From the NCBI RefSeq assembly GCF_902652985.1, contig NC_047022.1, forward strand, positions 16,988,001 through 17,052,000: a stretch of DNA of 64,000 nucleotides, given 5' to 3'. This stretch comes from Pecten maximus. Taxonomy: Eukaryota. Every line of letters begins with the position of its first letter. Positions within the stretch are counted from its first letter, which is position 1. A program made the translations under genes and the position numbers. Below are positions 3,101 to 57,977 of the stretch, piece by piece. The notes beneath the pieces are model-generated. The model ran no database searches and was not told where the DNA came from. It worked only from the letters and a program-made list of their open reading frames with translations.

Positions 3101-5159
3101 TGTTATATTCTCTGTTAACTTTATCTTACCATATAAATGTAAATAGAATGTAAATAGAATGTAAAACCACTGAGGTATAGACAGAACAAGAGCAATCAGG
3201 CCCAGGTAAATCCGGCTACACATTCATATGTGCACATGCAATTGACTATTTATCAAATGATATTCCGCCCATCGCAAAAGTGCGACAAGTTCGTATACAT
3301 TTGCATTAAGTGAAGATACATCCCATCATTAGCATTAGTGATGCTGTGTGTGTCTGCAATGCGTTTTATCAGACAAAAGAATCATTTATAAAATGAAATA
3401 TTAATTTGTAATGCGTGTTATCAGGTATCGTACTATAAAGTAGAACATTCAAACATTAAAAAGAAACATTATTTGTCAAATGAACTTATTTGATTATAAT
3501 ATTTCCTCGTATCTTCACACATATTTCGAACGAAACGAAATCTTTCATAATTAACTTCTTTGATATTGGAACTAATCTATGCTTTGATTCTGTGACATAG
3601 ATAATCTAAATGGTCTATTTCACCCTTGCTATGTAAAGACCATCTCTGGAACCAGATATTCAGTAGAAGGAAGTGTGTTATAACTCATTGCAAGGAAAGA
3701 AGAGAATATTTGCGCCAAAATCATAAGATATTTTTTTCGTTGTAGTTGAGTCATCCAGGTGATGAACGCAGGTCCTCTGGACCTTTTATGAGGACGGATA
3801 ATGTCTCGCCCATAGCTCGTCAGAAAAGATCGCCAATTATATCTCGTCATTCGTAAATTCTATAAACTATTTCGTAATGTATCTGACACATCATATTTAC
3901 CTTCATCTTTTTGTTAATGTAAAAATATGTGTGGCTTTTAACGTGACATGTAGGTAAGGAAATATATTACGCCGTAGGCGCGACGGAGAATCCAATGACG
4001 TCAGAGTCAATGGGTTTTATCCAGAAGTTCCGGTTATACATTCTGCTGTCGCTTTACGTCATACTATTACACAGTAAAATCTACGATGTCTGTAATATTC
4101 GTGAAGCTTTATCGATGACGTTTTACCATGGCATACACTTTTATTGTACAGCTCTCTCGAAATAGTTAATTGCGACATAACAATCTCAACGTTTGTAATA
4201 TTACAGTGACATCTTAATTCAAAGGTCAAATTAATATGACGTAAAGGTGGTCAGCTGATAAGCAGCACATGAGCATTTGATTAATAGACCGGCTTTACTA
4301 ATAACAATATGAACATTTTCTTCTTTGTTTGACAATACTAGATTGCATTTGTCTACACAGAGTAGTAAAAAAAGAAAGAAAAGAAAATAGACGAAAGAAA
4401 AAAAAAAGAAAAAAAAAATGTTTCTGCAATCATAAGATTTGCGATGTCAAGTCATCTGTTTGAAACCGTTCAGAACAAAGTCACAACTAGTTGTAAAATA
4501 CTCTATTGAGAGTTCATCAGCATTATTTAATCATTATTGTCAAATTGAATAGTTGTTGTTATAGTAATTTTCTTTTCTGAAAATATAGCACTGCATCAGT
4601 TTAACCTTTTAGACGTAATGTAGTTATTCATTTGTTATTTCCTGATTGATGATATCGGGTCGTATTTTGTCACAATGCAATAAAAACATTTTCATTGCCA
4701 ATGTAACGAAGACGAATTGATGTACATCTGCATTAGGACGGAGTAACGATGAAGATCCTGTTCACAGTAGGGCTAAAACTATAGTGACCTTTGGCTCTTT
4801 AAGGATGCATCTTACTAAGGGCAAAATAATTATACAAATTTACATCCTCCTTCCCGATTAGTCGCTCACGTAGAAAAAAACAATCCGTGTTAATTGTCTA
4901 TAAGAAAGCCTGTGATATTCCTATAACTTATCCTTGGAGTGGCAAAAAAAAAATATATATAAGGGAAGAGCAATACAAATATTCTTCCCGCGTTGGGGCA
5001 TCAAACTAGATAATGTTTGCTATTGCTCTCTAAGCGTACATCAAACTAAAATGCATGCTTATACAAAGACAAATTTTCCAAATATCCTTCATTAGGCTAA
5101 AAGTCCCAAGCTTGTACGGTAACAAACTTTCCACTCTGAAACATTATGGACGTTTTATG
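196..5159. repeat. Direct tandem duplication, two ~2.4-2.55 kb units (196-2592 and ~2598-5159)
   Basis: Near-identical sequence at offset ~2402; both units start tgtttataacgaattccac and end acattatggacgttttatg; unit 2 has extra segments near 4748-4872 and 4975-5042. Confidence 0.97.
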
Positions 5160-8100
5160 AAGTGTTCGATATTGCAGACAAAAGCTAATCTGAATAGCAT
5201 ACAGGTGGTAATTCACACGGTCACAGCCAGGACAAGTGTGCGGTAGATAAGTTTGTTGCTAGGCATGCACTCGGAAGATGTGTACACTCACTTAAACCTT
5301 ATACTAATAACAAGTATACATGTTATAATGACCTTGAGTAAAATATCGTCATTACAAATTATCTCAGGGTAGAAGATCAGAAAACGAAATCGACACAACC
5401 AAAAAATCTCTGTCATGGCCAAGAATCTTTTAAATGAATCTAGGTCGTGTTTGCTAAACGTTTTTGTAAAAATCTGGATATCCTCTTAGTCTTTTTATAA
5501 CCTGTATACTGAAGCACCATATGTGTAGTTAACACTAAATACAACAAACATTTGTTATATAGTCAACCAAACAATGACGGTGTCAAGTTAACCTTATAAT
5601 TGGCATATTGATAGTAGATAAAAATATAGATAGATACAGACATTATATTTACATTGATACACACATGTGTGTATGCATATAGTACTCTACTCAAATAAGT
5701 TTATAATTGAAACACGTACAATGCACTTTATATATTTAGACAAAAAAAACAAAAAAAAAACATTCGATATGAAAATCTAACGAGGTCATAAAAGTCATCA
5801 AGAAATATCATGTTGGTGTTGAATTATGCGGACTTTGATGCTGTAAAGTTTGTTTTGATCAGGTTATTGTTAGAAAACTGTATTGTATTGTATTGTATTG
5901 TATTATGTTAAATCATATTATCCCATTATGATAGTATTTATAATCTGGAATTTAAAAAAGGACAGAAAAGAGACATCTCCCTTAGAACTAGATCTAGAGC
6001 TAACATTAAAACTAGAACATTTTAGTGCCCTCGAAGACAGCAACAACCCGGGTTAATTGTCTTTAATAAAGCATGCTGTATACTTAGCTATAAGGGAGAT
6101 ACCTCTTTTTACACATATATTAGCTCTTACATAACTGGTCTAGCAAGTCCATTGATATCAGCGATCGTTGAAAGATAACACAAACATTGTTGTTGAGAAA
6201 ATAATTTAATCTCTCTGTTTTTTTTATTATATGTGTCTGTATATATATTAAAACTGCACAATAAAATGCCATAACCTGGACAGGAAGTCATATCACCTCC
6301 AGGTAATTATCATGTTAACAACAGGCTAACCAGCATCTACCTGTCAACACGTGTATTGACCTCAGCGTAAGTAAAGAGTCTTAATTAAGTACTAATTATT
6401 TGCCTAACCTTCAACTTTTAAATGCATGAGACTGATCAGCCTGACGTCACTGTCACATGTAGGTTGGATTTCCAGTGTCGTATCTGGTGTGCTATGTGAG
6501 GTGGTTTTGTATCAGGAGTATAGTTCAAATAAGATATTGCCGTCTGTAGGAACTTCAAACGCAGACAAAGAAACCTTAGATAACGCAATTCACGAAATCA
6601 CAATGAACGTACAAACTGAATATATATATAAATATTTAAATGTACAGTATACATTGTATATAGATTAAAAAAATAGAGATGAACTGCAATAAAATGTGCC
6701 CGTTATTTAAACAGAGGTTTTACAATTACAACGGTATTACAAGGGCATATCTATTACACTTATTGTACCGAAATGTTGTAAAACTGCTAATTTTGAAGTA
6801 ATGTCCAGAGTTTTGAAATGATAAAATATTTACAAAGACTTTACAGCTACTTACATTTCTATAGATATATATACAGAGCATGGAACTTACTAAAAGCGCA
6901 ATGAAATATTATATCACTCATGTGATCATAGATTGCCAAGCAAGAAGTGAAGTTACATATAGCTAGAGGAAGCAATAAGGCCAGATAAAACTGAATTGAA
7001 TATTTTAAATTATAAGACGTCTACGACGCAATATACCTACAGACAAAGAACAGTGAGATATCAGGCTAGTAACCGGATACATAGAGAAATAATAAAAAAA
7101 TATTCATATGCATTATTTTGCACACAACGCAAATTATTTATCGTTTTCTTTACAAAACAAATGTCATTTAGTATTTGTTTCAAACGAAAGCAATGATTTG
7201 CATATAATTGTACATATAATTATACATAGAAATATACATAGAAATATACATAGGAATATACATTTTATAACCAAGTACCAGGAAATATAGGTAAACTGGA
7301 CCTTCTTGCTAATTGTTTCATTCCTACCGACGTGACAAGTCATCAAGTCATTAGACAAAAACACTTAATAATTTGTGTCAAGTAAGCAATTATGTACAAT
7401 ACAACGATAACTAGTTCAAAATAATCAGTCATGATTATTTACTTCTGGTAATCATATAAAACTATAAACTATTTATCTTGCAACAATTGACACACAATTG
7501 ATATCCACTCATACAAGTCATATTTGTGAGCTCAGATTGAAGGTTTTACTGTGAGAGGAAACACGATGACGTACAGAATATCCACGTGGTCGATTAGGTG
7601 ACACACGCGTTTATTTAAGTCGATCAGAGAATCGAACCTTGGTCTCGTAGTTGAGAGCGTTTTCTGTGCCATCCAGCCGCCAATAATGAATACATATATT
7701 ATCAGTGGCTAGGTTAATTATTCGATCTGATGTTCTTTAAAAAGAACGTTGAGCTTGAATGTCATAGTCAGGTGGCTTAGTGGATAGCACACTCGCCATC
7801 TACCAATACAGCATGGGCTCCATCACCGAATTGGAGGTGAAAAGGCAAATCTGTTTGACCACGTCGAGTTTCATCGAGTATTCTTTCCTTCCTCATGATA
7901 AGCAATTCTAACATCTTAATAATAAAGTTAGTCATGCCATCATATTTCCAAACAAGAACACATTTTACTCCATACCTCAAAGAATATTAGAAAGGACCTA
8001 ATATCTAAAAGACCCTTTTAACACTTTATCCTTTACGAAAGACAAATATGCTGTATGATGTTTCATTATTTTGTACCATCTTTTAAGGAATATCTTTAAT

Positions 8101-8486: not shown

Positions 8487-11400
8487 CTGAAAAAAATGGG
8501 GCGGCTTGATTGACTATCCAGAACAAAATATATGACAGACTGTCTGATAAAGGTCGGTTGATAAATTCACAATTATTTAAATCTAATTTAAAACAGACAC
8601 ACCATATTTAATACTATTATAAGAAATTTGTAAATGAGCATCAGTATAAATTAAAATTTCCGTAAAATGAACACATATAGATGATCTCAATTTAGATAAT
8701 TAATGACATATACTTACTTACACATTATGTTATGATAATTACATTTAAATATTTCTTAAAATAACAACGTTATGCATTATATTAAATTTAATTTCGTACT
8801 GTGGAAATTAATCAACTTATAACTTATATAAGTTAGACTGATTAAACATGTGTTCATGATGCCCATTTAAATAGTAGTTTCTTAGACACAAGCTTCTTAG
8901 TATTTTCAATATTCTGATTTGTTTATCCGGACACACACAACTGTTTTGAATAAAATGTCTTGTCATGCTTACTCGACATATCCGCAAATAAAGCGTTTGA
9001 TTGCATTAAGTACATAAACTCGTCTGACAGGTGGCGGAAGTAATATTTCAAACTCACCATATCGATGACCTTGACATAACCGTAGGAAAAAACGACGGCG
9101 TTAGGGGGTGTGGCCACTGGCAGCATGAAGGCGAACGATGTGGCGATGGCGGTTGGGAACATGTAGTATAACGGATTCACTCCCAATTTTATTGCCTGAA
9201 ACAAACAATAAGTAATGCATACTTGCAAGTTGAAACGTATTTCATACTCCTCATTATTGAAATGTTTTATCGTAGAAAAATAGGCAGATAATGACAAACG
9301 TACAACCGTTGTTTACGAAGTATACACAGTGCGATATGTGCAAAAAATATTTTTGAAACTTTCAAATCTTCAACATTAAACAGGTCTATTTCAGAAGTTT
9401 TTGGCTGACTATTGTGGGATAGAAAACTGTAAATATGGAGTTTCTGGCGATATACAGACTGATAAAATCACGAGGTAACTTTATGATCTACATCGTAATC
9501 TCATTAAAATGTTCTATTTATCACAATATGAAGTATAACTTGCCCGATGTTTATTGGCATTCCCCGTGAGACCGTTGCTATCACCGTGTTTCTCGTTTTG
9601 ACCACGTGACATTATCGATTTTTATTTAGAATTACGGGCTCGTTATTTTAGTCGGCATTTGGCGGATGTCTGTGGTAAGGCAATGTTTAAATATTGCCCT
9701 CGTTTTGAGTAAGAATTATTATTTTGTTTACATGTCGATGTTATCTGTTTGCTTTTAGTTTCAGTCTAGAACCAGAACGATAGTTGATCCTTTCTTCAAT
9801 TTAAACGAGATATTAGAATATATCAGTAAAGGGGTATGTTGTGGGGGTATATAAGAGAATGCACCCTAGTTGCTTGCAAATATAAACATGAAATGAAGGA
9901 ATGCTATGAACTGATAACGACTGTAATGTTCACTTAATCATTCAAAACTTTTGTTATATTTTACCAGTTCGGCCATAATGGGCATCATCAATGTACAGAT
10001 GGCTGTGTTACTGGTCACTTCTGTAGCGGCCGCTACGATGTAACATAGGATGAGATTCATTACCCAAGGTTCAAAGCTACTAAACACGGTCAGTTTGTCT
10101 CCAAGCCAGGATGACAACCCGGATACCTTCAAAAAACCAAAATTTGATATCGGTCAATATATATGATACCAGTAATGGATTACAACTACCAAGGCATAGA
10201 TCAGGTAATATTATGCAAATTGAGGTTTATCGAATGCATAAATAATTAAATCATAACTTCAACGTCCAAGACCAGTAACCACAACTAAAGGGTAAGACAA
10301 ACACTCCAGTACTTCACTCTAAGTAAGCAAGGAGTGATGATTTATTTTATAGGAGCCTAATATTTACATACTTGATATTCAAATATTAACGTAACATATA
10401 TTCACCTGACTTCCATTTGCAAGTGCAAATCCGCCACCAATCAGTAGAATGACACCCCATGGTATAGATTTCTCCACCACTTTCCATGACATTAAGGGTT
10501 TAACGGCCATTTTAGAAGCTGAAATTCATGAAAAGACTAGTAAATTTCTCATAAAAATGTTGCTGCGATTAGATAAAAACACATACAAAACAAATAAATA
10601 AATAACCACCCCCCCCCCCCCCCCCCTCACCCCCCGCAAAAAAAAAAAAAAAAAAGAAACAAAACAGCAAAAAACAAGACTAACAATGGAAAGACTTAAT
10701 CATATAGAATACAGTGTCCCTCAGAGAAACAAGGAAACTGCTGACTGGGTTACACATGCATACATTGCGATATATGGTAAATGATGATGTGCGTGTTTGT
10801 ATTTACTGTTAGAAGACGTTAATACCTGGTGAGGTTACAATATTGTAGATAATGTAGGGTTTAACGTAAGTTCCTTTTGACCTCGTGTCTCGTGACTAAA
10901 GCTAATGTGTTAGTGTATCATTAAAGCGAATAATGTTATACGGAAGTTACTGACCTTTGCTATCATAAATGGATTCATCTGTTTTTCCAAACCTGAAAAT
11001 GTTTGGTATCTCGGACGGAAACAAGAAGAGACTTGCTGATATCAAAACGGATGGAGTCGAATCTGTAACGGTTCTGAAACAAAAATTATAATGTATCATT
11101 ACATCCATCCAATAGGATTATTGCTGCGGGGAAACTCGTATATGTTTATATTTACAATGACAAAAATTCAGCATCCTAATATAAGTGTCTGTTCGTGTTT
11201 AAGGATAGTGTATTTGCACTGAATAGTATATTTCAGATTTGCTAATACATGTATTCTGTTAAAAAAACACAACATAATTTAAAGATTATAGGCGTTTTAA
11301 GCCTTTGTGTGTCGGCCCGATTTCCTGTTGTATATAATTTCTATTAATTTTTGTACCATTCGGTTTTTCTTATCTTTTTATTTGACATCTGATGATGTGC

Positions 11401-17400: not shown

Positions 17401-20400
17401 TATGTATTTATATTCAGTCAAACATCCACCACATATATTCATATTCACTCAAACATCCACAAAATATATTCATATTCACTCAACTATCCACAACATATAT
17501 TTATATTTTAAGAAATTGAAAACTTACTTCATTCATGTATTCGTACGACATGACGTGTACATTACATAAACACATTAGCATCTGCTTGATGTGCAAATGA
17601 AGCCCGAGGCAACAACAGACATCTTATGGCTACCAATTTTCAATGAGATCACCTCAGCTACTATTTTGGATAACATACCACTACACTTTCATAGAATATT
17701 TTGTAAGGTAAGAAGAAAATTCTATTTTCTAGAAAGTAATTATGCCTTCCCAGATGATGACAGATGACGATCATTTTCAGAAATTTTAGTGACTTTTTCT
17801 TCACCTCCGGGATAATAAAGTTTCCGTATTTGTTATAGGCACTTTCAATCCTTCACATAATCGATCTCTGCATGACGCATATGGATCCCTGGTAAGCGAT
17901 AGCAGACGACTCTTTGAAATATAACGCCAGAATATGCATGACACGATACATTGTAAAAAGTTATGGTTGTAATTGATATTTTTCAACTTTATATTACCAT
18001 TAATTTCTGATTGGTCTGTCGTTTCTTTCATTGTCTTGGCGTCTTTGAGCTGGACCAGGACTGCGTTTGCTATTGGAATCATCATGGCAGTGGTAGCCGT
18101 GTTACTTATCCACATGGACAGAAACCACGTAGGAAGCATCATACCCAAGCATCAACCTTTTATAAAAAAAAAAAAGCATTTTGATATAACCTGAGCTGAA
18201 CGCATACTTAACAAAGTACAGATTTGGTGATGTGTAGCTTGGTCGAATAACGGAAACGCGTATATTTAATCTAATAGATTACTATTTCTATAAAAGTGTC
18301 CAGACAAAACAATAATGCAGTATCAATACTACTGTAAATGTTTAGTAAGTGTTTGTGTAACCGATATTCACATAATGCTTTCAGTTTAGAGTAACATGGA
18401 ACTCACCGATTTGTTACATAAACGTTTGACATTTATCTTTTGAATGGAATAGATACGTTATGTAGTACAAAACACAAACAATAATGAAGACAAAAATTGA
18501 AATTGCAAGTGTATGAAGCTATCGTATATTGTATCGTACCAATGAGGCTCTGATCCGACTATGACAAGGATCCTTAGTGCTATCCGTTTGTGGATGTTCC
18601 AATGTTCAATGGCAGCTGCTATCACAAGCCCACCAAAGAATAGCATGGTTGTGTCCTTGAGAACAGGGAAGCAAGACGGAGAAATGAATTTATCAACTGA
18701 TATATCAATTAATAATTATATTGTGGGGTTGGGCTGAAATACGTATATATCTACGATAACAAAGAAAATATATTGTGGACATTACATCCTATTTAAGAAA
18801 TATTTATTGTTGAACTACAATTTGAATTGATTACTAACGAACTAACTAACTAACTAATTAACTAACTAACTAACTAACTAAGTTAATAAACTAACTAATT
18901 GACTGACTTAATACTCTAAACTGAATCTTACATTGACATATTTTGCTGAAACATCTTTTGCAGACATCATCCCGACCATAGGGAATAAAATGATAGGCAG
19001 CAATGCTGTTACAGCTATTGGCAATGCTTCCGACACCCAATACACTGCCATGATGATGACGACATACGCACATTCTGACTCCTGTGAAAAAAAGAAACCT
19101 ATTATGTTTACAAACATTTACTACACTCGTATTCTTTATTCGAAAAACTAGGATAGAATTTGGAGATTATGTACATATCCCTTTCATCTTTCGACAGCTA
19201 AGAGTTGCATTTATTTGTCCTCGACTCACTACAGAGTTGGCAGTTTTTTTTATAGCAAATCTAGATTATTTTGAATAATAAGCGTAGTAGAATTCACTTA
19301 TGCCACATCATATATCGAACAATTTGTCTCAGAGGTGTGGACTCCAAATATGACACAACCCGTTTTGTATAAACTTCTATATAAAAATCCTTGTATATAT
19401 AAGCCACTTACTGCAGGCTTGCATCTACACAAGAGTAACATTTCAATATTTTTCGACGACGCATATGCTGACTTTGGTAATGCTGTCTTTTAGAATAATT
19501 GTTGTACGTGTAATTGATAGTATTTTATATAGCAGTGCAATTGCATATATTTTAATCTGCAGCGTCATCAGCGGTCTCAAAATTATTTCTTGCATTCAAC
19601 TATATTCTATTAAAATATTCTTCCAGTGAGCGGATTGTCAACCATTTGAACTCTATCCGAATGCTGTCGTTACGTCACCAATGATCAAAACGTTTGAATC
19701 CCGATTGGATAAGCATTGGGGAAAAACTGAATGTTTTTATAATCATGAAATAGACAATGATAACCTGATCCATGTTTCGGGGAAAAACTCATTGAAACTT
19801 CGATCTGGATATATGGGCTAATATTGCCTGCGTCCAGTAATAATATTATTATTGTTATTATTTAAACTGGCAACAAAAACCTTTCAATAAGTGATGGTAG
19901 TTATATTAAATTATCATTAGATCTTACATGCTGCTGCTAAACAAGTAATTTAAATTTGATCCGTATTCTGCCTTAAAATATTAAGGTTCGTTACACAGCA
20001 TATCCTGTAGCTATCATTGAAATGTTCTCTGCTAGTGGACTTCGTATCCCCTGGCTTTGCCATTATCCTGAAGGCCATGTTTGATGCTTATAAATAGTGG
20101 CACTGGTTCAAAATATCAACGCGTGTTTTCTATTTTGGATAATGATAAAATACATAAACAAATACGGAACTGATATAATTACAGGATCAATGACCCCCCC
20201 CCCCCCCCCCTCCCTCCCCCTATTTCCCCATTCTATTTTTGGATATTAGTCTAGGCCATATTAGATTTCCCGTATTTCTTTCTAGATTTCCACATTTGGC
20301 CTTTAGGATCGCTGACAAGTCCTATACATTTGTATTTCGGTTTCTATCATAAATCCGATGTGTTAAGGTGCTATGCATCTGTATGCCCTGTGTACTTTAC

Positions 20401-48470: not shown

Positions 48471-48560
48471 AATTGATATTGGTGTTAATAGCGACTCTAA
48501 CCTCCGTCATCTGTCACACTCACAAGCCAGAATCTGAAAATACTCATGAAGCAACCGAAG
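48471..48560 (+). CDS. Gla-TSP1 gene: signal-peptide tail exon
   Basis: tctcttgtag|..LILVLIATLTSVICHTHKPESENTHEATE|gtacat; 90 bp, phase 1-1. Confidence 0.75.
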
Positions 48561-51500
48561 GTACATTGACATTTTTCTTATAACTTAAAATAAATGTTGT
48601 ATGTTAAATTAAACCAAGATGCTATGCATTGCCAAGACTAAGATTGATAGTTGATTTTCAAACACTGCATTTTGCTACAATGTAATTTGTTCTATAATCA
48701 CATCGATTATCAGTATAGTCGAGGTTTGGGGTGTTTACATTTTTCATTCTGTTTATTTAATCTTTGTCTTTATACGATTTGGATTGTAGTTATTTGATCC
48801 GATTTCGCCATAATAATATTCAAATTGTCTCTAGTTGTTTAACTCATTTTATACAAAACGCCGGTGAGCTAATACGCTGTGTCAGTCGTCTCTCCCTCTG
48901 TCCGTCATTTATTTCTTCAAACGGCATTCAGCCTTAAAAGATTTTAAACAAATTCATATTGAGCGCGAAGATGAATCAATTTTATATAATGGAGGTCATG
49001 GCTTTAACAATAGGAATATAAGCACACCTTAATTTTCTTTTTTCGGGAGAAATATAGAAATTAATTTTGTTCAAATTTGGGTTGTAGTGTCTTTGGATGA
49101 AGCTTTTTATCAGCAGGAATTCTTGCTCCCCTTGAGTTGAGTGTTTAAATATTGCATTTGCAGTGGGTCAGATTAGGAACCAGGAAATCAAATTTTATAC
49201 ATCATGTGCATAATTCTGAATGCTTTGAATGAGAAGTTTTTGAAATGATTGTTAAAATTGCGAAATGTGCGATAGAAGTCCTTTACGCCTCTTGTTTCCA
49301 TACGGCTCCATAATTCGTTCACAGACTGCTGGAATATACAGGCGTATGTGGTATTCATATATATTATTCATACATAACATTCAAATTATCAGATGGTTTT
49401 TTTTTCTAATACTGACCTCTCTGTAATTGATATAATGTTAATGTCATTTTTGTAATTAGCAAATATTTCCCCGGGGGTTCTCTATATTTGCTATGCCATA
49501 TCATGCGAGAGTTGTTATGACTGATTTGTCAGTTTCCATACTCAATATAGATAACTTGATCATCATTATATATTTATGACATTGGTACATATAAACGAAA
49601 ACGTGATTTAATTAAATACTTACAGACTATTAAGTTAACATAGTTTAGTCATTCCTAATATGTGACCTTCCAATGAAGGTAGTCATGAAAATCTAGTTCT
49701 TACTAGTATAGCAAATAGCATTGGGAGGGAAAATACGGTCACATATGAGAGGAAGTAGCTGAACCCAGGCGATAACTAAAGCGGTTTTGACTGTTTTTCA
49801 TAATAGTTTCAATGTAATCAATAAATGAAGATGTAAGTATTACTTACTGAGTGTGTTCAAATATAGATACAGTTTATAACATATATAGACCTTCTTATCC
49901 ATTCCGTAACAGAAATAGTGTGTGCAACAAATCGATGTTGTTAGTTTCATTTACCAATCAGTTGGACTGGACTGTAATTGCGTATGGATATATTTCGAAC
50001 AATCTACTCATTATGAATTATTTATTTATTTTGTAAAACATTGAACGAATTCTATTGAATGCAAGGGCATTTTAATATCTTACTGATGGGCCATGCATAT
50101 ATCCATTCTCTAACTGTGACGTTACAACTTCAGTTTTCAGTTTTCAGAAACCAATAAAACCAGTACCTATTTCTATCATTAATTAGTCAAAATATGTTAA
50201 TTTGTAGAATGCTAAAAAGAAATAAGCATGTAAATTTCATTGCTGTTGTGCTGAATATCTTTCTGTAGATATTGGATGATTGGGCGTTTGGTGGTTCTAA
50301 GAGAGCTGATGTTCTCTCGACAAGTGCTGTTTTCATTGTGTCCTTTACTTGGACACGTTACTAACCTCAATACACCTCTTAGTTGCTATACGTCAGACCT
50401 CTCACATGTTGATCAATAGAATAGCCACCGGCTACTGCACGAAAACATATCCTAAAGATGCCAAAACTGCTGCCAAAAACGCAACAAGCAAAGCTCTATT
50501 TTTTTTATTTTTTTTTTTTATATATATATATATAATTTGTCAAGTAGTAATAACGACTGCATAGACAATTTAATTGTAAAATAAATTTATATATATACAT
50601 TGATACTACATTCTGTGTGATTTATCAACTGAAATAGATAATACTTGCTACTAATTTCAAAGCATTGTTGAAATAAATCCATGTTAAATTAGTTTGGACA
50701 CTCGAGAAACATGTTATATCCTCATCAATGTTTTAGGTAACTTTTGCAACTCTGTTTTTGCAGTCGATTTTTTTCTGACTGAAAAAATAGCAAAGTCATT
50801 CCTGAATCATGGGCATCGCGTCCGAAGGGGGGATAATCCTCGAGCAGAATGTAGTGAGACGGGAGGATGTTCCTGGGAGGAAGTGAGGGAACACTATGGA
50901 AGCCACAATGCTATCGTAAGTAGCAGTAAAGCGAAATAAACTTTATATTTCATACTCATTAAACAGTGGTGTTTTTTTTATCAATAGTAAATAGGCTTAA
51001 ACTATAGTTATGCACGAGCTTATGCTGTAAATAAATGTTCTATACATATTCTATAAATATATGTTTAAGAGTTTTAAAACGTTGTTTACCTCGTTTACTG
51101 TTGATGCTACATTTAGAAAGCCGAGTGGCGAGTCCTTACAGCGGTCTACTTACGAGCTGTAACTTATGCATTATTTATATAAATATATACATTTGCTTTT
51201 AAATCACGTCTGATAATATTTTCAAACAGTGATTTTCACAGTTATATTCGCTTTTACTTACTTAACTGCAATACATATATATAATTTTTTATTGTTGTTT
51301 TTTGTAGAAGGGAGTTAATATATTGCAACAAAAGAAATTACTAATTACTGTAGTAATTGCTTTTCAGATTGAGTTCTCGCGTGAATTCAAATGTGGAAAT
51401 GACTGCCAATATGATAGTTTTACCTATTGTGAATTAACGACCAGTTCCTGGAACGAAATCAGCGAAGTTAAGTACAGATGTTCTCGTGAGTATAAATGAA

Positions 51501-54500
51501 ATTTTAACAATTGTTATTAATCGTTAAGTTCTGATAATAGAACGAATTAACATAAGAATTGGTATTGTCGATACCATTTCGGTAGCTGTCAAGAAATCGA
51601 GCTTAACTTTTACGACCTTTATTGATAGCTGGACTGTATACAAGCTTCACGTTTTCAAATAATTGAATTATTACTGGGAACAAAACGTTGAAGCACAATC
51701 AGAGACTTAGTCAATCTGCGTTATGTTAGTTAAACTTACAATACACGTACTCTTGAAATATGGTCTCATTTATAATTTCATGACTTCTCTTCGGGATTTT
51801 TTTTTTTTTTTTTGTAAAGATTTGTCCCAAATCAGTCTTGAGGAATAGAACATAACATATACATAATTCGGTTTGACATTCTTAATTCGGTATACAAAGT
51901 ACCATATCCGTAACTTAATGTACATGTGCTATTCAGTTTAGTATCTTTGATTTGCCCTCTATTGGAAAGATTCACACTCCGGTCTTTAGCAGTAGTCATT
52001 CCAATCTCAATATCTCGGCCAATCTCTTCAAGACTCAGTATCACGTCTGATTCCGTACATTTACGGAACTGATCGTGTTTGTCACTGATCGTGATATCGT
52101 GATGAACATCGTCCATAAATGTCTTTGTAGTTTAGGGATGTAAAGTTCAGTGCAATTACATGTACGAGTGCAAGGAATGTACGGTTTACTGCCCGAACCC
52201 GATAGTGGGACGCAAGGTTCAAATATACTAACAGTCAGCATCGTTATAATTCAATATTCCCCTTAAATATTTAACCAATCACATGCAAACAGATCCAAAA
52301 CCATAATTAGGCTGCATCTTGCATTTGTGAATTGTGCATAAATGCAATCTTCTTAATGATATAGGTATCAATGTTGCTATATATTTATAGGAGCAGGTGG
52401 ATGGGGAGGATGGGGTGAATGGGACGAGTGTTCAGTAACATGTGGAACAGGAAATAGGCAGAGGGAAAGGAACTGTGACAATCCAAGTCAAATGGGTGGT
52501 GGCGCCAATTGCCGGGGTAGCTCCGTCCAGACCACAGCATGCGTATTGACAGCGTGTCCTGGTAAGTGTTAGTTGCAAACGTTGAATACGGGCATTGAAA
52601 CAAAACTGTCAAAAGAAGTTTCGTACATTGGCAGGAGAAGGTGCTATATATATATATAAACAACCAAGTGCTAACGCCAAGAAAAGGTCAATAAAATTGA
52701 CACCGGGGGCTTATTTCCTTCTGCTTCAAGTTTAACATTCTTACGCAGTCTTATTATCAGTAATCTATGTGTACATTTTTAGCTCACCTGGACCGAAGGT
52801 CCGGTGAGCTTATGTCATGGCGCAGCGTCCGTCGTCCGTCCGTCCGTCGTCCGTCGTCCGTCAACATTTGCTTCAAATCGCTACTAGTCAAAAAGTTCTC
52901 GTTGGATGTTGACCAAATTTGGCCTGAAACATCCTTGGGGGCAGGGAACAGATTTTGCATAAATGGTGACTCTGACCCCCGAGGGGCCTAAAGGGACGGG
53001 GCCCAATAGTGGAAATAGAGGTAATTCCTTTAAATCGCTACTAGTCATAACGTTATGAATGGATTTGAACCCAATTTGGTCAGAAACATCCTTGGGGGAA
53101 GGGGAACAGATTTTGCATAAATGGTGACTCTGACCCCTGAGGGGCCAAAGGGGTGGGGCCCTAATAGGGGAAATAGAGTTAATTCCTTTAAATCGCTACT
53201 AGTCATATAGTTATGAATAGATTTGAACCCAATTTGGTCAGAAACATCCTTGGGGGAAGGGGAAGAGATTTTGCATAAATGGTGACTCTGACCCCTGAGG
53301 GGCCAAAGGGATGGGGCCCAATAGGGGAAATAGAGGTCATTCCTTTAAATCGCTACTAATCATATAGTTATGAATAGAGTTGAACCAAATTTAGTCAGAA
53401 ACATCCTTGGGGGAAGGGAAACAGATTTTGCATAAATGGTGACTCTGACCCCCGAGGGGCCAAAGGGCGGGGCCCAATAGTGGAAATAGAGTTAATTCCT
53501 TTAAATCGCTACTAGTCATGAAGCTATGAATGGATTTGAACCCAATTTGGTCAGCAACATCCTTGGGGGAAGGGGAACAGATTTTGCATAAATGGTAGCT
53601 CTGACCCCAAAGGGGCCAAAGGGGTGGGGCCCAATAGGGGAAATAGAGGTCATTCCTTTAAATCGCTACTAGTCATAAAGTTATGAATGGATTTGAACCC
53701 AATTTGGTCAGCAACATCCTTGGGGGAAAGGGGAACAGATTTTGCATAAATGGTAGCTCTGACCCCAAAGGGGCCAAATGGATGGGGCCCAATAGGGGAA
53801 ATAGAGGTCATTCCTTTAAATCGCTACTAGTCATAAAGTTATGAATGGATTTGAACCAAATTTAGTCAGAAACATCCTTGGGGGAAGGGGAACAGATTTT
53901 GCATACATGGTAGCTCTGAACCTAAAGGGGCCAAAGGGACGGGGTCCATAAGGGGAAATAGAGGTAATTCCTTTAAATCGCTACTGGTCATGAAGTTATG
54001 AATGGATTTTGACCAAATTTGGTCAGAAACATCCTTGGGGGAAGGGGAACAGATTTTGCATAAATGGTGACTCTGACCCCCGACGGGCCAAAGGGGCGGG
54101 GCCCAATAGTGGAAATAGAGTTAATTCCTTTAAATCGCTACTAGTCATATAGTTATGAATAGAGTTGAACCAAATTTAGTCAGAAACATCCTTGGGGGAA
54201 GGGGAACAGATTTTGCATAAATGGTGACTCTGACCCCCGAGGGGCCAAAGGACGGGGCCCAATAGTGGAAATAGAGTTAATTCCTTTAAATCGCTACTAG
54301 TCATGAAGCTATGAATGGATTTGAACCAAATTTAGTCAGAAACATCCTTGGGGGAAGGGGAACAGATTTTGCATAAATGGTAGCTCTGACCCTAAAGGGG
54401 CCAAAGGGACGGGGCCCATAAGGAGAAATAGAGGTAATTCCTTTAAATCGCTACTAGTCATATAGTTATGAATAGAGTTGAACCAAATTTAGTCAGAAAC

Positions 54501-57500
54501 ATCCTTGGGGGAAGGGGAACAGATTTTGCATAAATGGTGACTCTGACCCCAAAGGGGCCAAAGGGCGGGGCCCAATAGTGGAAATAGAGTTAATTCCTTT
54601 AAATCGCTACTAGTCATGAAGCTATGAATGGATTTGAACCCAATTTGGTCAGAAACATCCTTGGGGGAAGGGGAACAGATTTTGCATAAATGGTAGCTCT
54701 GACCCCAAAGGGGCCAAAGGGGTGGGGCCCAATAGGGGAAATAGAGGTAATTCCTTTAAATCGCTACTAGTCATAAAGTTATGAATGGATTTGAACCAAA
54801 TTTAGTCAGAAACATCCTTGGGGGAAGGGGAACAGATTTTGCATAAATGGTAGCTCTGACCCTAAAGGGGCCAAAGGGACGGGGCCCATAAGGGGAAATA
54901 GAGGTAATTCCTTTAAATCGCTACTAGTCATAAAGTTAGAATGGATTTGAACCCAATTTGGTCAGAAACATCGTTGGGGGAAGGGGAACACATTTTGCAT
55001 AAATGGTGACTCGGACCCCAAAGGTGCCGAAGGGGCGGGGCCCAATGGGAAAATAGATTTAATTCGTTTGAATCGCTACTTGTCATAAAGTTATGAATGG
55101 ATTTGAACCCAATTTGGTCAGAAACATTCTTGGCCCAATTTGGTCAGAAACATCCTTGGGGGAAGGGGAACAGATTTCCTTTAAATCGCTACTAGTTATT
55201 AAGTTATGAATGGATTTGAATCCAAATTGATCAGAAACATCATTGGGGGAAGGGAAACATATAGTGCATAAATGGTGACTCTGACCCCAAAGGGGCGGGG
55301 CCCAATAGGGGAAATAGAGGTAATTCCTTTAAATCGCCACTAGTCATAAAGTTATGAATGGATTTGAACCCAAATGGTCAGACATATCTTGGGGGAAGGG
55401 GAACAGATTTTGCATAAATGGTGGCTATGACTCCAAAGGGGCCAAAGGGACGGGGCCCAATAGGGGCAATAGAGGTAATTCCTTTACATCGCTACTAGTC
55501 ATAAAGTGATGAATGCATGTTCTAAAAACAATTCTTGAGGTCTTTCAGACCTTAGAGAGTCTGGACTTCATTCATCTTTAAAGCAGTTCGGATTCCCACA
55601 CTATAACCATATATAGCATTGTTTGAGATTTACAAATAAAACAAATTGAATATGAACATTATTTTGACATTTGGTCTAATCCAACCAGGTGAGCGATACA
55701 GGCCCTATGGGCCTCTTGTTTAAAACTAAATTAAAATCTACAGGTACTTAAAATGTTTGTGTCCTTAAATTACATTGACGACACGGAATGGTTATTATTA
55801 AGGGAGATTTAAGCGATATTTTCTATGTTATGCTCTATCAATAAAATAACAATGACCCAATCATCGTTATTAATGTTTCAATGTATCAACCACAGTCCTC
55901 ATTTAGAGAACGTGGCATTACCAGAATTCGACTGAGACCAACATGGCACACAAGTATCGCCGATGAAGCAATGGCAGTTGCTCGTCCGAATAGTGGTCTC
56001 ATTACCTTTGTACTTTTTTTAAAGGTCTTTATCGTATATTTTGATCATATTTTACCTACGTTATGTCAATTATGGGTTAGAATCATGGTTGTATTTCGTT
56101 ATCTGTTAATATTTCTTGATAGTAGTATCTCTGCTTTCACAACATATTCCTTATATATTAGCAATATAGACACTATATTTTGCATATATATTTCATATTT
56201 TCTGTAACGGAGATGTCAAAAGAGCTACTTAATTAGAATTTTCATTTTATATGTCTTCTGTTATATTTGGGATCTACAGTTGATGGCGTTTGGGGAAGCT
56301 GGGAACAATGGGGAGCTTGTCCTGTAACCTGTGATTCGGGAAACCAGTTTAGAAATCGTACATGTGACAACCCCACACCCAGCAATGGCGGTATCTACTG
56401 CCAAGGAAGATCTTTCGACTCCAAACAATGTACTTTGGCTGCATGTCCAGGTAAAATATGATCTGTAAAGGAACATCTCAAATATTTACTGTTACATGTA
56501 CCTCTATTCCTATTGTAACATGTATGTTGTCTTGGTTTTGCAATTTCAAGTTGTTGCACGAATTCGTGTTCGCCAAGTAAATCTAGGATTATGTGGATGA
56601 ACAAACTTATTCAGTTATTAAACCCAAAGTTCTAACCCTTAAATAATTCATGTTTGGCTTTTGAATAGAGATGTTTGACCCTGAAGAAATGCAGATATGT
56701 GTAAGGGAAATATTCCAGGAGAAAAATCTAATCATTATGATTTAACAAGACACAACTTATGATCTTCCTTCTAATTCATAAACAGTACGCATTCAATACC
56801 TTAGTTGAAATTAAGCAGTAATGACATGTTTGTGTTAGATAATTATCTAAATGTTTTATATGCATGCATATTTGCTTAGTTCATGGAGGTTGGGCGTCCT
56901 GGAAAAGTTGGAGCTCATGTGCTTTAGTGAACAAAAATGTCAAAAGGACAAGATGTCGCACGTGCACTAACCCTGTCCCTGAAAATGGGGGAAATAGCTG
57001 TCCTCGCCGTCGTATACATTCTGAGCGGTGTGCCATTCCGAAATGTAAGCTTTTTGCATATCTGAGCTGTATAACATTCAATTATTTAGATTTAACGTGA
57101 CGCTTTTTCAACATTATTGCAATGACACGATTTATTCACGTGATCACCAATGTGTTTTCATCTATGATATTGTTAAATCGCCCTTTTCCCAAAAACATGC
57201 GTAAGGGAAGTGAAATCATAAATGAATTTCACTCTTCAGAGACGACACATATTAATTATGCGATAAATTCAATCTTTGACTCTTTTAGTTAATGATATCA
57301 TAATAACATAACACCCGTGCATTCGTATCTATTGCCGACAGCATACGTAAATGCCTATCGAACACTTAAATAACGTGGTGGCGAACATAGCATTAATTGC
57401 TAAACATCCATTGTTTAAATATGGTCTAATTCTTTTGCCCATTAGCTGCTCTTCGGCGCCCATGTCGATGTCCGATATCGCGAGTCGCTGTGGCTAAGAA

Positions 57501-57977
57501 CATAAGTGCAGATGAATTAGTGGAATTGGTGAACAACATCAAAGAGGAGCTGAGCGTCGATGTGTCCAAACTATCAAGTAAGTATATCAGAACAATAGCC
57601 AAATGTCAAAATCTATTGAATTATGCTCAACTACAGGTGGCAGTATTTCATTAGCTTGAAAATAGTCTGAATACGACGATGATTGTGATTGATCTTTTAA
57701 AGAGTATAGCAAAACATTACAAGCTAAGTGAAAGACAAGAATAGATAATATATGTCATTAAAGGTATTGGATTTTGTTTTCAGAAACTATCAGAAAGAAA
57801 ATATCTGTGAAAGATACAAGATCGTCAGTAAAAACAATAGGAGTTCTGGGCACAATCATGTTGATCATCCCGTTGTCGATTGTCATCGGTCTTGATCTTC
57901 TAAACGTTTACAGATACTTCAAACAAGACAAGGTGGGGGTCGAACCAGGAGATGGACCTGCCGGAAGTCAACAGTGA
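48471..57977 (+). CDS. Type-I membrane protein: signal peptide, vitamin-K-type propeptide, Gla-like domain, 4-Cys module, 3x TSP1, coiled segment, TM helix (~400 aa; start exon not located)
   Basis: Exons 48471-48560, 50764-50915, 51368-51485, 52391-52561, 56280-56450, 56880-57044, 57446-57577, 57784-57977. All AG/GT bounded; intron phases 1,0,1,1,1,1,1 join them into one open frame ending at TGA 57975-57977. Confidence 0.88.
48858..49297 (+). mobile_element. Old degenerate HINE-like remnant in intron
   Basis: ccggtgagcta...tccgtc start and gtgcgatagaagtcctttacgcctcttgttt end. Confidence 0.45.
50764..50915 (+). CDS. Gla-TSP1 gene: propeptide + Gla-like exon
   Basis: tttttgcag|(V)DFFLTEKIAKSFLNHGHRVRR-GDNPRAECSETGGCSWEEVREHYGSHNAI|gtaagt; phase 1-0. 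Confidence 0.88.
51368..51485 (+). CDS. Gla-TSP1 gene: aromatic-stack-like helix + 4-Cys module
   Basis: ttttcag|IEFSREFKCGNDCQYDSFTYCELTTSSWNEISEVKYRCS|gtgagt; phase 0-1. Confidence 0.85.
52391..52561 (+). CDS. Thrombospondin type-1 repeat exon 1
   Basis: AGGWGGWGEWDECSVTCGTGNRQRERNCDNPSQMGGGANCRGSSVQTTACVLTACP; WxxWxxW, CSVTCG and RxRxRxC motifs; 171 bp, phase 1-1. Confidence 0.96.
52776..55721 (+). mobile_element. Non-autonomous Helentron-type (HINE/DINE-1-like) element with ~17 internal ~157-bp tandem monomers
   Basis: 5' sub-terminal TAGCTCACCTG with nearby inverted GGTGAGCT, (CCGT/CGT)n microsatellite, monomers starting aaatcgctactagtca at 52875, 53032, 53190, 53347 and onward, 3' CAGGTGAGCGA then hairpin AGGCCC-tat-GGGCCT, T-rich flanks; lies in the intron between TSP1 exons 1 and 2. 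Confidence 0.88.
56280..56450 (+). CDS. Thrombospondin type-1 repeat exon 2
   Basis: VDGVWGSWEQWGACPVTCDSGNQFRNRTCDNPTPSNGGIYCQGRSFDSKQCTLAACP; 171 bp, phase 1-1. Confidence 0.96.
56880..57044 (+). CDS. Thrombospondin type-1 repeat exon 3 (divergent, basic)
   Basis: VHGGWASWKSWSSCALVNKNVKRTRCRTCTNPVPENGGNSCPRRRIHSERCAIPK; 165 bp, phase 1-1. Confidence 0.92.
57446..57577 (+). CDS. Gla-TSP1 gene: CxC + amphipathic/coiled stalk exon
   Basis: ALRRPCRCPISRVAVAKNISADELVELVNNIKEELSVDVSKLS|gtaagt; 132 bp, phase 1-1. Confidence 0.88.
57784..57977 (+). CDS. Gla-TSP1 gene: last exon, TM helix and short tail
   Basis: TIRKKISVKDTRSSVKTIGVLGTIMLIIPLSIVIGLDLLNVYRYFKQDKVGVEPGDGPAGSQQ*. Confidence 0.9.

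What the first reader, a model, noticed from the sequence alone, without database searches (positions are those of the whole stretch)
50764..51485. Hidden vitamin-K-dependent propeptide and Gla-like domain in an invertebrate gene
Seen: the exon encodes VDFFLTEKIAKSFLNHGHRVRR-GDNPRAECSETGGCSWEEVREHYGSHNAI, and the next exon starts IEFSREF. Established: the gamma-glutamyl carboxylase recognition propeptide has F(-16), A(-10), L(-6) and a furin site (factor IX: TVFLDHENANKILNRPKR), and the Gla core reads [34 protein letters not shown]. Here F-x5-A-x3-L has the same spacing, RVRR is a furin site, and ECxE..CSxEExRExY plus EFxxxF match the Gla core and aromatic stack. Inference: this is a gamma-carboxylated, Ca2+-binding module in a probable bivalve. 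Coagulation-type Gla domains are mostly characterised in chordates, and cone-snail Gla peptides use a different scaffold. The ORF track shows it only as an anonymous 81-aa ORF.
Basis: partly seen in the sequence, partly recalled or inferred. Interest (0 to 1): 0.92.

Follow-up and report, generated by a model that had tools for sequence, protein, structure and literature searches.

The report
Cryptic Gla-like module in scallop gene
A mollusc cell-surface gene starts with a short, divergent relative of the vitamin-K-dependent "Gla" calcium-binding module of blood-clotting factors, and it belongs to a small gene family, which gives testable candidates for the unknown natural targets of the vitamin K carboxylase in such animals.

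Summary
Exon 50764-50915 encodes a hydrophobic F-F-L..A..F-L helix, an RVRR furin site and an E-C-x5-C-S-W-E-E-V-R-E core. The next exon starts I-E-F-S-R-E-F.

It is not chance. The same genome holds six more such exons. All have the same intron phases, and the five with sequence to inspect are followed by a 4-Cys exon and TSP1 exons.

A profile of the seven exons hits only vitamin-K-dependent Gla proteins in the PDB (38 of 38, best E 7e-7). A protein-language-model search also puts Gla clusters first (0.90, 201/256 features). The single exon alone is below Pfam's Gla threshold (13.9 bits against 27).

Exon layout matches human F9: signal exon, phase 1; propeptide plus Gla exon ending 15 residues after the second Cys, phase 0; then the aromatic-helix exon. 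The invariant Glu residues sit at the prothrombin Gla16/26/29 positions. Three GGCX-type loci and one VKOR locus are present.

Caveats:
- The omega loop is missing.
- The register of the A-x-S-F-L motif (propeptide or mature N-terminus) is ambiguous.

Verdict: a real, divergent Gla-domain homologue heading a signal–pro–miniGla–4Cys–TSP1x3–TM protein, and a probable GGCX substrate. It is a new variant of a known kind.

The parts
48471..48560 (+). Exon with the hydrophobic core of a signal peptide (LILVLIATLTSVIC...). It is entered in phase 1 and left in phase 1. The exon carrying the ATG lies upstream and was not located.
   Evidence: The last base G joins TC of the next exon to give Val. One search found no convincing upstream ATG exon.
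50764..50915 (+). Exon for the propeptide-like helix, the furin site and the Gla-like core (the finding).
   Evidence: Acceptor phase 1, donor phase 0.
50769..50804 (+). Candidate GGCX recognition helix F-F-L-T-E-K-I-A-K-S-F-L, with F-x5-A-x3-L spacing.
   Evidence: A, F and L are invariant in 13 family sequences. AlphaFold2 predicts a helix over residues 6-14. In the FIX chain 9bvk_P the profile match starts at chain residue 3, which is F-16.
50817..50828 (+). RVRR, a furin-type R-x-[KR]-R site.
   Evidence: A dibasic or furin site stands at this place in 6 of 7 scallop copies and in the P0003 and P0005 clusters.
50847..50891 (+). Gla-like core E-C-S-E-T-G-G-C-S-W-E-E-V-R-E, with a Cys-Cys loop and conserved Glu residues.
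   Evidence: E28, C29, C35, E39 and E42 are invariant. The core profile alone hits only FIX and FVII Gla domains (E 0.065).
51368..51485 (+). Exon with an aromatic helix (I-E-F-S-R-E-F-K) followed by a 4-Cys module of unknown fold. Phase 0 in, phase 1 out.
   Evidence: Paralogues read x-E-[FY]-M-R-x-[FYL]-x-C. AlphaFold2 predicts a helix over residues 2-12 and then two strands, at pLDDT 64. No family match was found.
52391..52561 (+). TSP1 repeat 1, phase 1-1 exon.
   Evidence: Pfam TSP_1, E 4.8e-14; splice sites.
56280..56450 (+). TSP1 repeat 2, phase 1-1 exon.
   Evidence: Pfam TSP_1, E 2.2e-10; splice sites.
56880..57044 (+). TSP1 repeat 3 (divergent), phase 1-1 exon.
   Evidence: Pfam TSP1_spondin E 0.001 and TSP_1 E 0.0074, both below cut-off; splice sites.
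57446..57577 (+). Stalk exon, phase 1-1.
   Evidence: no family match.
57784..57977 (+). Exon with the transmembrane helix (TIGVLGTIMLIIPLSIVIGLDLL), a 24-aa tail and the stop codon.
   Evidence: The tail has no PPxY or LPxY motif.

Best explanation
Exons 50764-50915 and 51368-51485 encode a divergent, shortened homologue of the vitamin-K-dependent propeptide plus Gla domain. It forms the N-terminus of a type I membrane protein with this order: signal peptide, propeptide, mini-Gla, aromatic helix, 4-Cys module, three TSP1 repeats, stalk, TM helix, short tail.

Proposed mechanism (inferred, not shown):
1. In the ER, one of the scallop's GGCX enzymes docks on the amphipathic helix F-F-L..A..F-L.
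2. It carboxylates the Glu residues just downstream. Candidates are E28, E31, E38, E39 and E42 of the exon, and the two Glu residues of I-E-F-S-R-E-F.
3. Furin then cuts after RVRR.
4. The mature head binds Ca2+ through Gla residues arranged on two short helices pinned by the Cys-Cys loop.
5. Because the omega-loop keel is absent, the head probably does not insert into phosphatidylserine membranes. It more likely makes Ca2+-dependent contacts with a protein, matrix or mineral ligand at the tip of the TSP1 stalk.

Shown: sequence, exon structure, the family, and similarity to Gla domains. Inferred: carboxylation, cleavage, Ca2+ binding and the ligand.
For: 1. Specific similarity.
- Pfam's only hit for the exon is Gla, and PRRG2 is the only PDB hit.
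- Profiles of the scallop exons hit only Gla-domain proteins: 38 of 38 with best E 7.4e-7, 33 of 33 with best E 1.3e-6, and 11 of 11.
- A control profile of the neighbouring 4-Cys exon hits no Gla protein.
- ESM-Atlas features: the top three named clusters are all PF00594 Gla; the best scores 0.90 with 201 of 256 shared features.

2. Exon layout as in F9.
- PMC8911121 states that exon 1 carries the signal peptide, exon 2 the propeptide plus Gla domain, and exon 3 the helical stack.
- Its Table 3 gives coding lengths of 88, 164 and 25 nt, hence phases 1, 0, 1. Exon 2 therefore ends at residue 38, which is 15 residues after Cys23.
- The scallop exons have phase 1 in and phase 0 out, 15 residues after the second Cys. 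The next exon opens with x-E-[FY]-x-[RK]-x-[FY], like T-E-F-W-K-Q-Y.

3. Conservation.
- Invariant across 13 sequences: A, F and L of the helix, E-C, C, and the two Glu residues of C-x-W-E-E-V-x-E. The furin-site Arg residues are nearly invariant.
- A metagenome relative (P0005) reads C-W-F-E-E-M-Y-E-I-Y-E-N-Y-E-R-S up to the same intron.

4. Machinery. Three loci carry both HTTM and VKGC-lumenal exons, and one VKOR locus is present.

5. Secretory context. A signal-peptide exon, TSP1 repeats and a TM helix are present.
Against: - The single exon scores 13.9 bits against Pfam's 27-bit Gla cut-off. The other six copies and the metagenome relatives get no Pfam hit at all.
- The window copy has no omega loop, has Ser where vertebrates have the stack Trp, and has a Cys loop of 5 residues (3 in the paralogues) against 4 in vertebrates.
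- The best HMMER scores come from aligning A-[KN]-S-F-L to the mature ANSFLEE of factor X or protein C, not to the propeptide. The split profiles are only marginal on their own (E 0.66 and 0.065).
- The position equivalent to F-16 is M, V or T in the paralogues.
- The structure models are of low confidence (pLDDT 65) and fold searches found nothing.
- There is no direct evidence of transcription, splicing or carboxylation. Only 6-16% of the stretch's words occur in four runs, and only one of those is on record as RNA.
Confidence: 0.6

Rival explanations
1. The module is a true relative of the Gla domain but is not a GGCX substrate. It would be a relic in which ordinary Glu residues and the disulfide loop form a small acidic helical head, or a pro-region simply removed by furin. 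The A-K-S-F-L stretch would then be the degenerate counterpart of the mature omega loop (ANSFLEE) rather than a carboxylase recognition site.
For: - HMMER's best alignments place A-[KN]-S-F-L on residues 1-5 of mature factor X, protein C and FVII.
- In copy L014 the distance from that motif to the first Cys is the same as in factor X.
- The F-16 equivalent is not conserved among the paralogues.
- The Glu residues of the omega loop are missing.
Against: - The spacer between F-L and E-C varies from 9 to 15 residues across the family, unlike the fixed omega loop.
- The exon begins 2-3 residues before the hydrophobic pair, as F9 exon 2 begins one residue before F-16 (PMC8911121).
- A furin site is conserved just after the motif.
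- For FIX and PRRG2, HMMER spans the propeptide: query 4-43 against chain 3-54, with a 12-residue insertion.
- The genome keeps three GGCX-type genes that need substrates.
Confidence: 0.22
2. The resemblance is convergent or due to chance. On this view a Glu-rich helix with a small disulfide loop behind a prohormone-type cleavage site is a lineage-specific invertebrate module unrelated to Gla domains.
For: - It lies below the Pfam threshold.
- Each sub-profile is marginal alone.
- The 1.84-billion-protein representative search returned only repeat artefacts.
- No structural match was found.
Against: - Every hit in four independent profile searches is a Gla protein, and a control profile gives none.
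- The language-model search, which uses no alignment, agrees.
- Two intron positions and phases coincide with those of F9 (PMC8911121).
- The invariant Glu and Cys residues match functionally important Gla-domain positions.
Confidence: 0.1
3. The exon is not part of an expressed, correctly spliced gene. It would be a pseudo-exon or belong to a decaying duplicate.
For: The ATG-bearing first exon was not found. One family copy (L017) has lost the basic site.
Against: All eight exons from 48471 to 57977 join in frame, with canonical splice sites and a stop codon. The neighbouring tandem copy has the same layout. Four runs of the same organism hold word shares of a size compatible with exon-only coverage.
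Confidence: 0.06

Closest known systems
Coagulation-type Gla domain with its propeptide (factors IX, X, VII, protein C, prothrombin; Pfam PF00594)
   Same: - Order of parts: signal exon, then hydrophobic-x-A-x-x-[FI]-L helix, then dibasic cut, then E-C..C-S-[FW]-E-E-x-x-E core, then an aromatic helix.
- Intron phases 1, 0, 1, with the second intron 15 residues after the second Cys.
- Only Gla proteins are hit by the family profile (PMC8911121).
   Different: - No omega loop or keel, and no Glu at positions 6/7.
- Cys loop of 5 (or 3) residues instead of 4.
- Ser in place of the stack Trp.
- Below Pfam's cut-off.
- The aromatic helix shares an exon with a 4-Cys module instead of being a 25-nt mini-exon.
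- Followed by TSP1 repeats rather than EGF or kringle domains.
Vertebrate transmembrane Gla proteins PRRG1-4 (TMG)
   Same: Single-pass membrane proteins with an N-terminal propeptide and Gla module. PRRG2 is the only PDB hit of the single exon, and it recurs in every profile search.
   Different: PRRGs have a full Gla domain directly before the TM helix, and PPxY/LPxY motifs in a proline-rich tail (PMC5578492). Here a 4-Cys module, three TSP1 repeats and a stalk intervene, and the 24-aa tail has no PY motif.
Tunicate Gla proteins (Ci-Gla1-4, Gla-RTK; Kulman et al. 2006, cited in PMC9669250)
   Same: Gla modules placed on non-coagulation, developmental or receptor-type architectures in an animal without a clotting cascade.
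   Different: As I recall them, those are canonical Gla domains that Pfam recognises, and they are from chordates. This one is from a protostome and is divergent.
Gamma-carboxylated Conus venom peptides (conantokins and others)
   Same: Mollusc GGCX substrates whose carboxylation is directed by a hydrophobic recognition sequence in a cleaved pro-region (PMC12112360, citing Bandyopadhyay 1998 and 2002).
   Different: Conopeptides do not have the Gla-domain scaffold or its exon structure. They are secreted toxins, not membrane proteins.
Osteocalcin and matrix Gla protein (from memory, not tested here)
   Same: Short Gla regions without an omega loop, a C-x5-C loop like the window copy, and Ca2+ or mineral binding rather than membrane insertion.
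   Different: They are small soluble vertebrate proteins with an E-x3-E-x-C motif. No match to them appeared in any search here.

Membership tests
Gla domain (Pfam PF00594) | Score above the curated gathering threshold of the family HMM (27 bits) | tested here: not met
   13.9 bits, E 0.063, matching profile positions 12-29 of 41. The other six copies and P0003/P0004/P0005 get no hit. The genome-wide PF00594 scan gave only two sub-threshold matches, in ORFs with no Gla-like features.
Gla domain (Pfam PF00594) | Significant and specific profile similarity to proven Gla domains | tested here: met
   Family profiles against PDB sequences: 38 of 38, 33 of 33 and 11 of 11 hits are Gla proteins, with best E values of 7.4e-7, 1.3e-6 and 1.2e-4. 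ESM-Atlas puts Gla clusters first.
Gla domain (Pfam PF00594) | Disulfide loop Cys17-Cys22, with Glu at the positions of Gla16, Gla26 and Gla29 (prothrombin numbering; their functional weight is from memory) | tested here: met
   E28-C29, C35, E39 and E42 are invariant in 13 sequences. Loop length differs from vertebrates: 5 or 3 residues against 4.
Gla domain (Pfam PF00594) | N-terminal omega loop with Gla6/7 and a hydrophobic keel | tested here: not met
   Only 7 residues (G-D-N-P-R-A-E) lie between the RVRR site and the first Cys. Copies L016 and L018 do have [WF]-F-Y-E-L-E-E-E there.
Gla domain (Pfam PF00594) | C-terminal aromatic-stack helix (F-W-x-x-Y) encoded at the start of the next exon | tested here: inconclusive
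   I-E-F-S-R-E-F keeps E, F and the i+4 aromatic residue but not the Trp. Paralogues read E-Y-M-R-W-[YF]. A helix is predicted at low confidence.
Gla domain (Pfam PF00594) | Exon structure of vitamin-K-dependent genes (phases 1, 0, 1; exon 2 ends 15 residues after the second Cys) | tested here: met
   compared with the F9 exon description and coding lengths in PMC8911121.
Vitamin-K-dependent propeptide (GGCX recognition site) | F-16, A-10, L-6 and a dibasic propeptidase site at -4 to -1 | tested here: inconclusive
   F-x5-A-x3-L and RVRR are present, but a 3-residue H-G-H insert puts the residues at -19/-13/-9. A and L are invariant, while the F position is F, M, V or T in the family. The propeptide-only profile is not significant (E 0.66) and aligns to mature ANSFLEE.
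Vitamin-K-dependent protein (functional class) | Glu residues actually converted to Gla by GGCX | not testable with these tools
   Needs mass spectrometry or a carboxylation assay.
Vitamin-K-dependent protein (functional class) | GGCX and VKOR encoded in the same genome | tested here: met
   HTTM plus VKGC-lumenal exons at C1:58.32-58.34 Mb, C4:46.98 Mb and C4:47.02 Mb (C220 is a likely haplotig). VKOR is at C8:46.12 Mb.
PRRG/TMG transmembrane Gla proteins | Gla domain next to the TM helix, and a cytoplasmic tail with PPxY/LPxY motifs | tested here: not met
   Three TSP1 repeats and a stalk intervene. The tail N-V-Y-R-Y-F-K-Q-D-K-V-G-V-E-P-G-D-G-P-A-G-S-Q-Q has no PY motif.

The most novel reading that the evidence does not exclude
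The propeptide-plus-Gla cassette, with its exon structure, predates the protostome-deuterostome split. Scallops keep a multigene family of endogenous GGCX substrates (mini-Gla, 4-Cys and TSP1 heads on membrane and matrix proteins), served by an expanded set of three carboxylase genes. These would be the first non-venom vitamin-K-dependent proteins identified in a protostome, possibly working in Ca2+-dependent adhesion or CaCO3 handling.
Probability: 0.45. Interest if true: 0.82.

Novelty: new variant of a known kind. Interest (0 to 1): 0.7.

Why it matters
GGCX and VKOR are conserved in molluscs and insects. Outside cone-snail venom, however, no natural substrate is known, and fly GGCX knockouts show no phenotype (PMC12112360, PMC5578492).

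In the papers I could read, canonical Gla domains are reported from vertebrates and tunicates (PMC9643190, PMC9669250).

A family of Gla-like heads that Pfam cannot see, with the same intron positions as clotting-factor genes, would do three things:
- It would push the origin of the module back to the bilaterian ancestor.
- It would give concrete proteins on which to test vitamin-K-dependent carboxylation in a protostome.
- It would show a Gla module combined with TSP1 repeats, a combination I did not find described.

Tried and rejected
- **Whole-library HMMER search with the exon.** It returned only two repeat artefacts, so it says nothing either way; not even the window's own protein came back.
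- **PF00594 scan of the genome.** Two sub-threshold matches, in ORFs with no Gla-like features.
- **AlphaFold2 models.** The Gla-like exon gave pLDDT 65.6. Foldseek against the PDB found nothing and VIA-align wide gave Z <= 3. The model of the next exon gave pLDDT 64.5 and was not searched. All uninformative.
- **Relatives of the 4-Cys exon.** No Pfam hit. The PDB gave only weak knottin-like peptides.
- **RNA junctions.** One earlier-written local script and the coordinate-only ORF list covered them.
- **First coding exon.** A scan for ATG plus a phase-1 donor gave no convincing candidate.
- **Literature.** Motif strings and 'Gla domain' combined with mollusc or bivalve terms gave nothing relevant. 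Kulman 2006 is not held.
- **dN/dS between copy pairs.** Too few sites to be useful.
- **Joined (spliced) protein.** Every search was made exon by exon, by reference.
Full report
**1. The observation**

The window is G000:C8:16988001-17052000 of a 918-Mb assembly in 3,983 contigs. Those figures fit my recollection of the king scallop reference assembly, but the tools name no organism.

- Exon 50764-50915 has a phase-1 acceptor (ttgcag|TC) and a phase-0 donor (ATC|gtaagt).
- It encodes, after a split Val codon, a hydrophobic stretch D-F-F-L-T-E-K-I-A-K-S-F-L-N, then H-G-H-R-V-R-R, then G-D-N-P-R-A-E-C-S-E-T-G-G-C-S-W-E-E-V-R-E-H-Y-G-S-H-N-A-I.
- Exon 51368-51485 (phase 0 in, phase 1 out) begins I-E-F-S-R-E-F-K-C and carries four Cys.

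**2. The gene**

All downstream exons join in frame with canonical splice sites.
- 52391-52561 and 56280-56450 are clear TSP1 repeats (E 4.8e-14 and 2.2e-10).
- 56880-57044 is a divergent third TSP1 repeat.
- 57446-57577 is a stalk.
- 57784-57977 holds a transmembrane helix, a 24-residue tail and the stop codon.
- Upstream, 48471-48560 encodes the hydrophobic core of a signal peptide and ends with the G of the split Val codon.
- The exon with the ATG was not found.

The earlier notes s1-794533, s1-794554 and s1-794629 on architecture, intron phases and the missing omega loop are thereby confirmed. Every search used single exons by reference.

**3. It is a family, not a chance motif**

The exon or its paralogue, used as query in the window's own genome, found six further copies. 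The family profile found exactly those seven places in 918 Mb.
- One copy lies 2 kb beyond the window's end and is a tandem duplicate.
- Three lie at C8:42.70-42.93 Mb.
- Two lie on small contigs that look like haplotigs or recent copies.
- All seven have a phase-1 acceptor. Six have a phase-0 GT donor exactly 15 residues after the second Cys; L019 has it at 14.
- In each of the five loci where flanking DNA is available, the next exon starts x-E/D-[FY]-x-[RK]-x-[FYL]-x-C and carries four Cys (phase 0 in, phase 1 out). TSP1 repeats follow.
- After this cassette the genes differ: three TSP1 repeats and a TM helix here; three TSP1 repeats in the neighbour too, where no TM exon was looked for; EGF-like exons and very large exons elsewhere.

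Short ORFs from metagenome assemblies belong to the same family.
- P0005 and its cluster read, after R-T-K-R, S-A-Y-E-E-C-R-E-G-C-W-F-E-E-M-Y-E-I-Y-E-N-Y-E-R-S and then run into a GTAAGT-type read-through at the same place.
- P0003 carries two E-C-R-E-G-C units.
- P0019 has F-x5-A-x3-L in front of the core.

**4. Is it a Gla domain?**

Taken alone, the exon gives only weak hits, but they all point the same way. Pfam's only match is PF00594 Gla (13.9 bits, E 0.063, cut-off 27). The only PDB sequence match is PRRG2.

Profiles are clearer.
- The seven-exon profile hits 38 distinct PDB sequences. All are vitamin-K-dependent Gla proteins: factor X 7.4e-7, protein C 2.6e-6, then FVII, FIX, prothrombin and PRRG2.
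- The 13-sequence profile gives 33 of 33 Gla proteins (best 1.3e-6). A five-sequence subset gives 11 of 11.
- A control profile built from the adjacent 4-Cys exon hits no Gla protein.
- An alignment-free search by protein-language-model features puts three Gla clusters first. The best scores 0.90 with 201 of 256 shared features, a count the tool says is typical of true family members.

Invariant columns across 13 sequences are the A, F and L of the helix, E-C, the second Cys, and the two Glu residues in C-x-W-E-E-V-x-E. By the alignments, these are the residues before Cys17, Cys22, and the positions of Gla26 and Gla29 in prothrombin numbering. From memory, those three Gla residues are the ones whose loss is most damaging in prothrombin.

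**5. Exon structure**

PMC8911121 states that F9 exon 1 encodes the signal peptide, exon 2 the propeptide and Gla domain, and exon 3 the end of the Gla domain with the helical stack.
- Its Table 3 (patients per coding length) gives coding lengths of 88, 164 and 25 nt, hence intron phases 1, 0 and 1.
- Exon 2 therefore begins inside codon 30 (Val-17) and ends at residue 84, which is mature residue 38 and 15 residues after Cys23.
- The scallop exon also begins inside a Val codon just before the F-F-L, ends 15 residues after the second Cys in phase 0, and is followed by E-F at residues 2-3 of the next exon, as in T-E-F-W-K-Q-Y.

Two shared intron positions with shared phases are hard to explain by convergence.

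**6. What does not fit**

- The window copy has no omega loop: seven residues separate RVRR from the first Cys.
- It has Ser where the stack Trp should be.
- Its Cys loop has five residues.
- F, A and L stand at -19, -13 and -9 from the cut because of an H-G-H insert.
- HMMER's best scores come from aligning A-[KN]-S-F-L to residues 1-5 of mature factor X and protein C. On its own the propeptide part is not significant (E 0.66), and the core alone is marginal (E 0.065).

I nevertheless prefer the propeptide reading, for four reasons:
- The spacer from F-L to E-C varies from 9 to 15 residues in the family.
- The motif sits at the exon start, as the F9 propeptide does.
- A furin site follows it in nearly all members.
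- For FIX and PRRG2, the HMMER match spans the propeptide from F-16 with a 12- to 15-residue insertion where the omega loop lies.

Whichever register is right, a conserved R-x-[KR]-R means the helix is probably removed from the mature protein.

**7. Machinery and expression**

- HTTM and VKGC-lumenal exons lie together at three loci: C1:58.32-58.34 Mb, C4:46.98 Mb and C4:47.02 Mb. A further copy on C220 is a likely haplotig. VKOR is at C8:46.12 Mb.
- Four sequencing runs of the same organism hold 6-16% of the words of 50764-51485, where exons make up 37% of the stretch. Only one run is on record as RNA.
Splicing and expression therefore remain unverified.

**8. Verdict**

The finding is real.
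- Homology to the vitamin-K-dependent propeptide/Gla cassette is well supported; I put it near 0.85.
- That the protein is actually carboxylated is plausible but unproven; I put it near 0.55.
- It does not qualify as a canonical PF00594 member. It is best described as a shortened Gla-domain variant without an omega loop, heading a TSP1-repeat membrane protein.
- In the literature I could search, nothing describes Gla-domain proteins in bivalves or a Gla-TSP1 architecture. The library is incomplete, and genome annotations could not be consulted.

Noticed in passing
window 52871-55133 and 55176-55515: A 157-bp satellite (14.4 copies, 91% matches, plus a shorter 155-bp array) fills much of the intron between TSP1 exons 1 and 2. 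Its six-frame ORFs look like repeated peptides but are not coding.
   Followed up: partly
L025 2091-2225, 2671-2785, about 3135-5319 (G000:C8:17054091 onward, 2 kb past the window end): A tandem paralogue with the same layout: a Gla-like exon (R-R-K-R then S-A-Y-E-E-C-R-E-G-C-W-F), a 4-Cys exon and three TSP1 exons. It is the closest scallop relative of the metagenome cluster P0005.
   Followed up: partly
L027/L028, L029/L030, L031/L032 (G000:C8:42.70-42.94 Mb): Three more genes open with the Gla-like, 4-Cys and TSP1 cassette. They continue with EGF-like exons and, in two of them, giant 400-540-aa exons with only a weak fn3 match. The cassette is evidently shuffled onto different extracellular proteins.
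   Followed up: partly
G000:C1:58320828-58339845; C4:46979282-46988177; C4:47013429-47024085; C220:6599-16727: Three loci carry both HTTM and VKGC-lumenal exons, plus a likely haplotig on C220. This suggests an expanded gamma-glutamyl carboxylase gene set in this mollusc.
   Followed up: partly
L017 1498-1632 (G000:C8:42929417-42929551): This family copy has P-W-K-Y-P-D where the others have R-x-[KR]-R, and its donor site is less clear. It may be an uncleaved variant or a decaying copy.
   Followed up: no
P0003, P0004, P0006, P0007 (metagenome ORFs): These relatives have two E-E-C-R-E-G-C units in one open frame behind a single F-L-L..A-L-S-F-L..K-K-R-R leader. The Gla-like core is thus duplicated internally.
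   Followed up: no
window 8926-9297 and 17804-18148, minus strand: Exon-sized ORFs match the sodium:sulfate symporter family (Na_sulph_symp, E 3.4e-7 and 0.0032). An SLC13-type transporter gene lies upstream on the other strand.
   Followed up: no
They were left out of all later searches.
   Followed up: no
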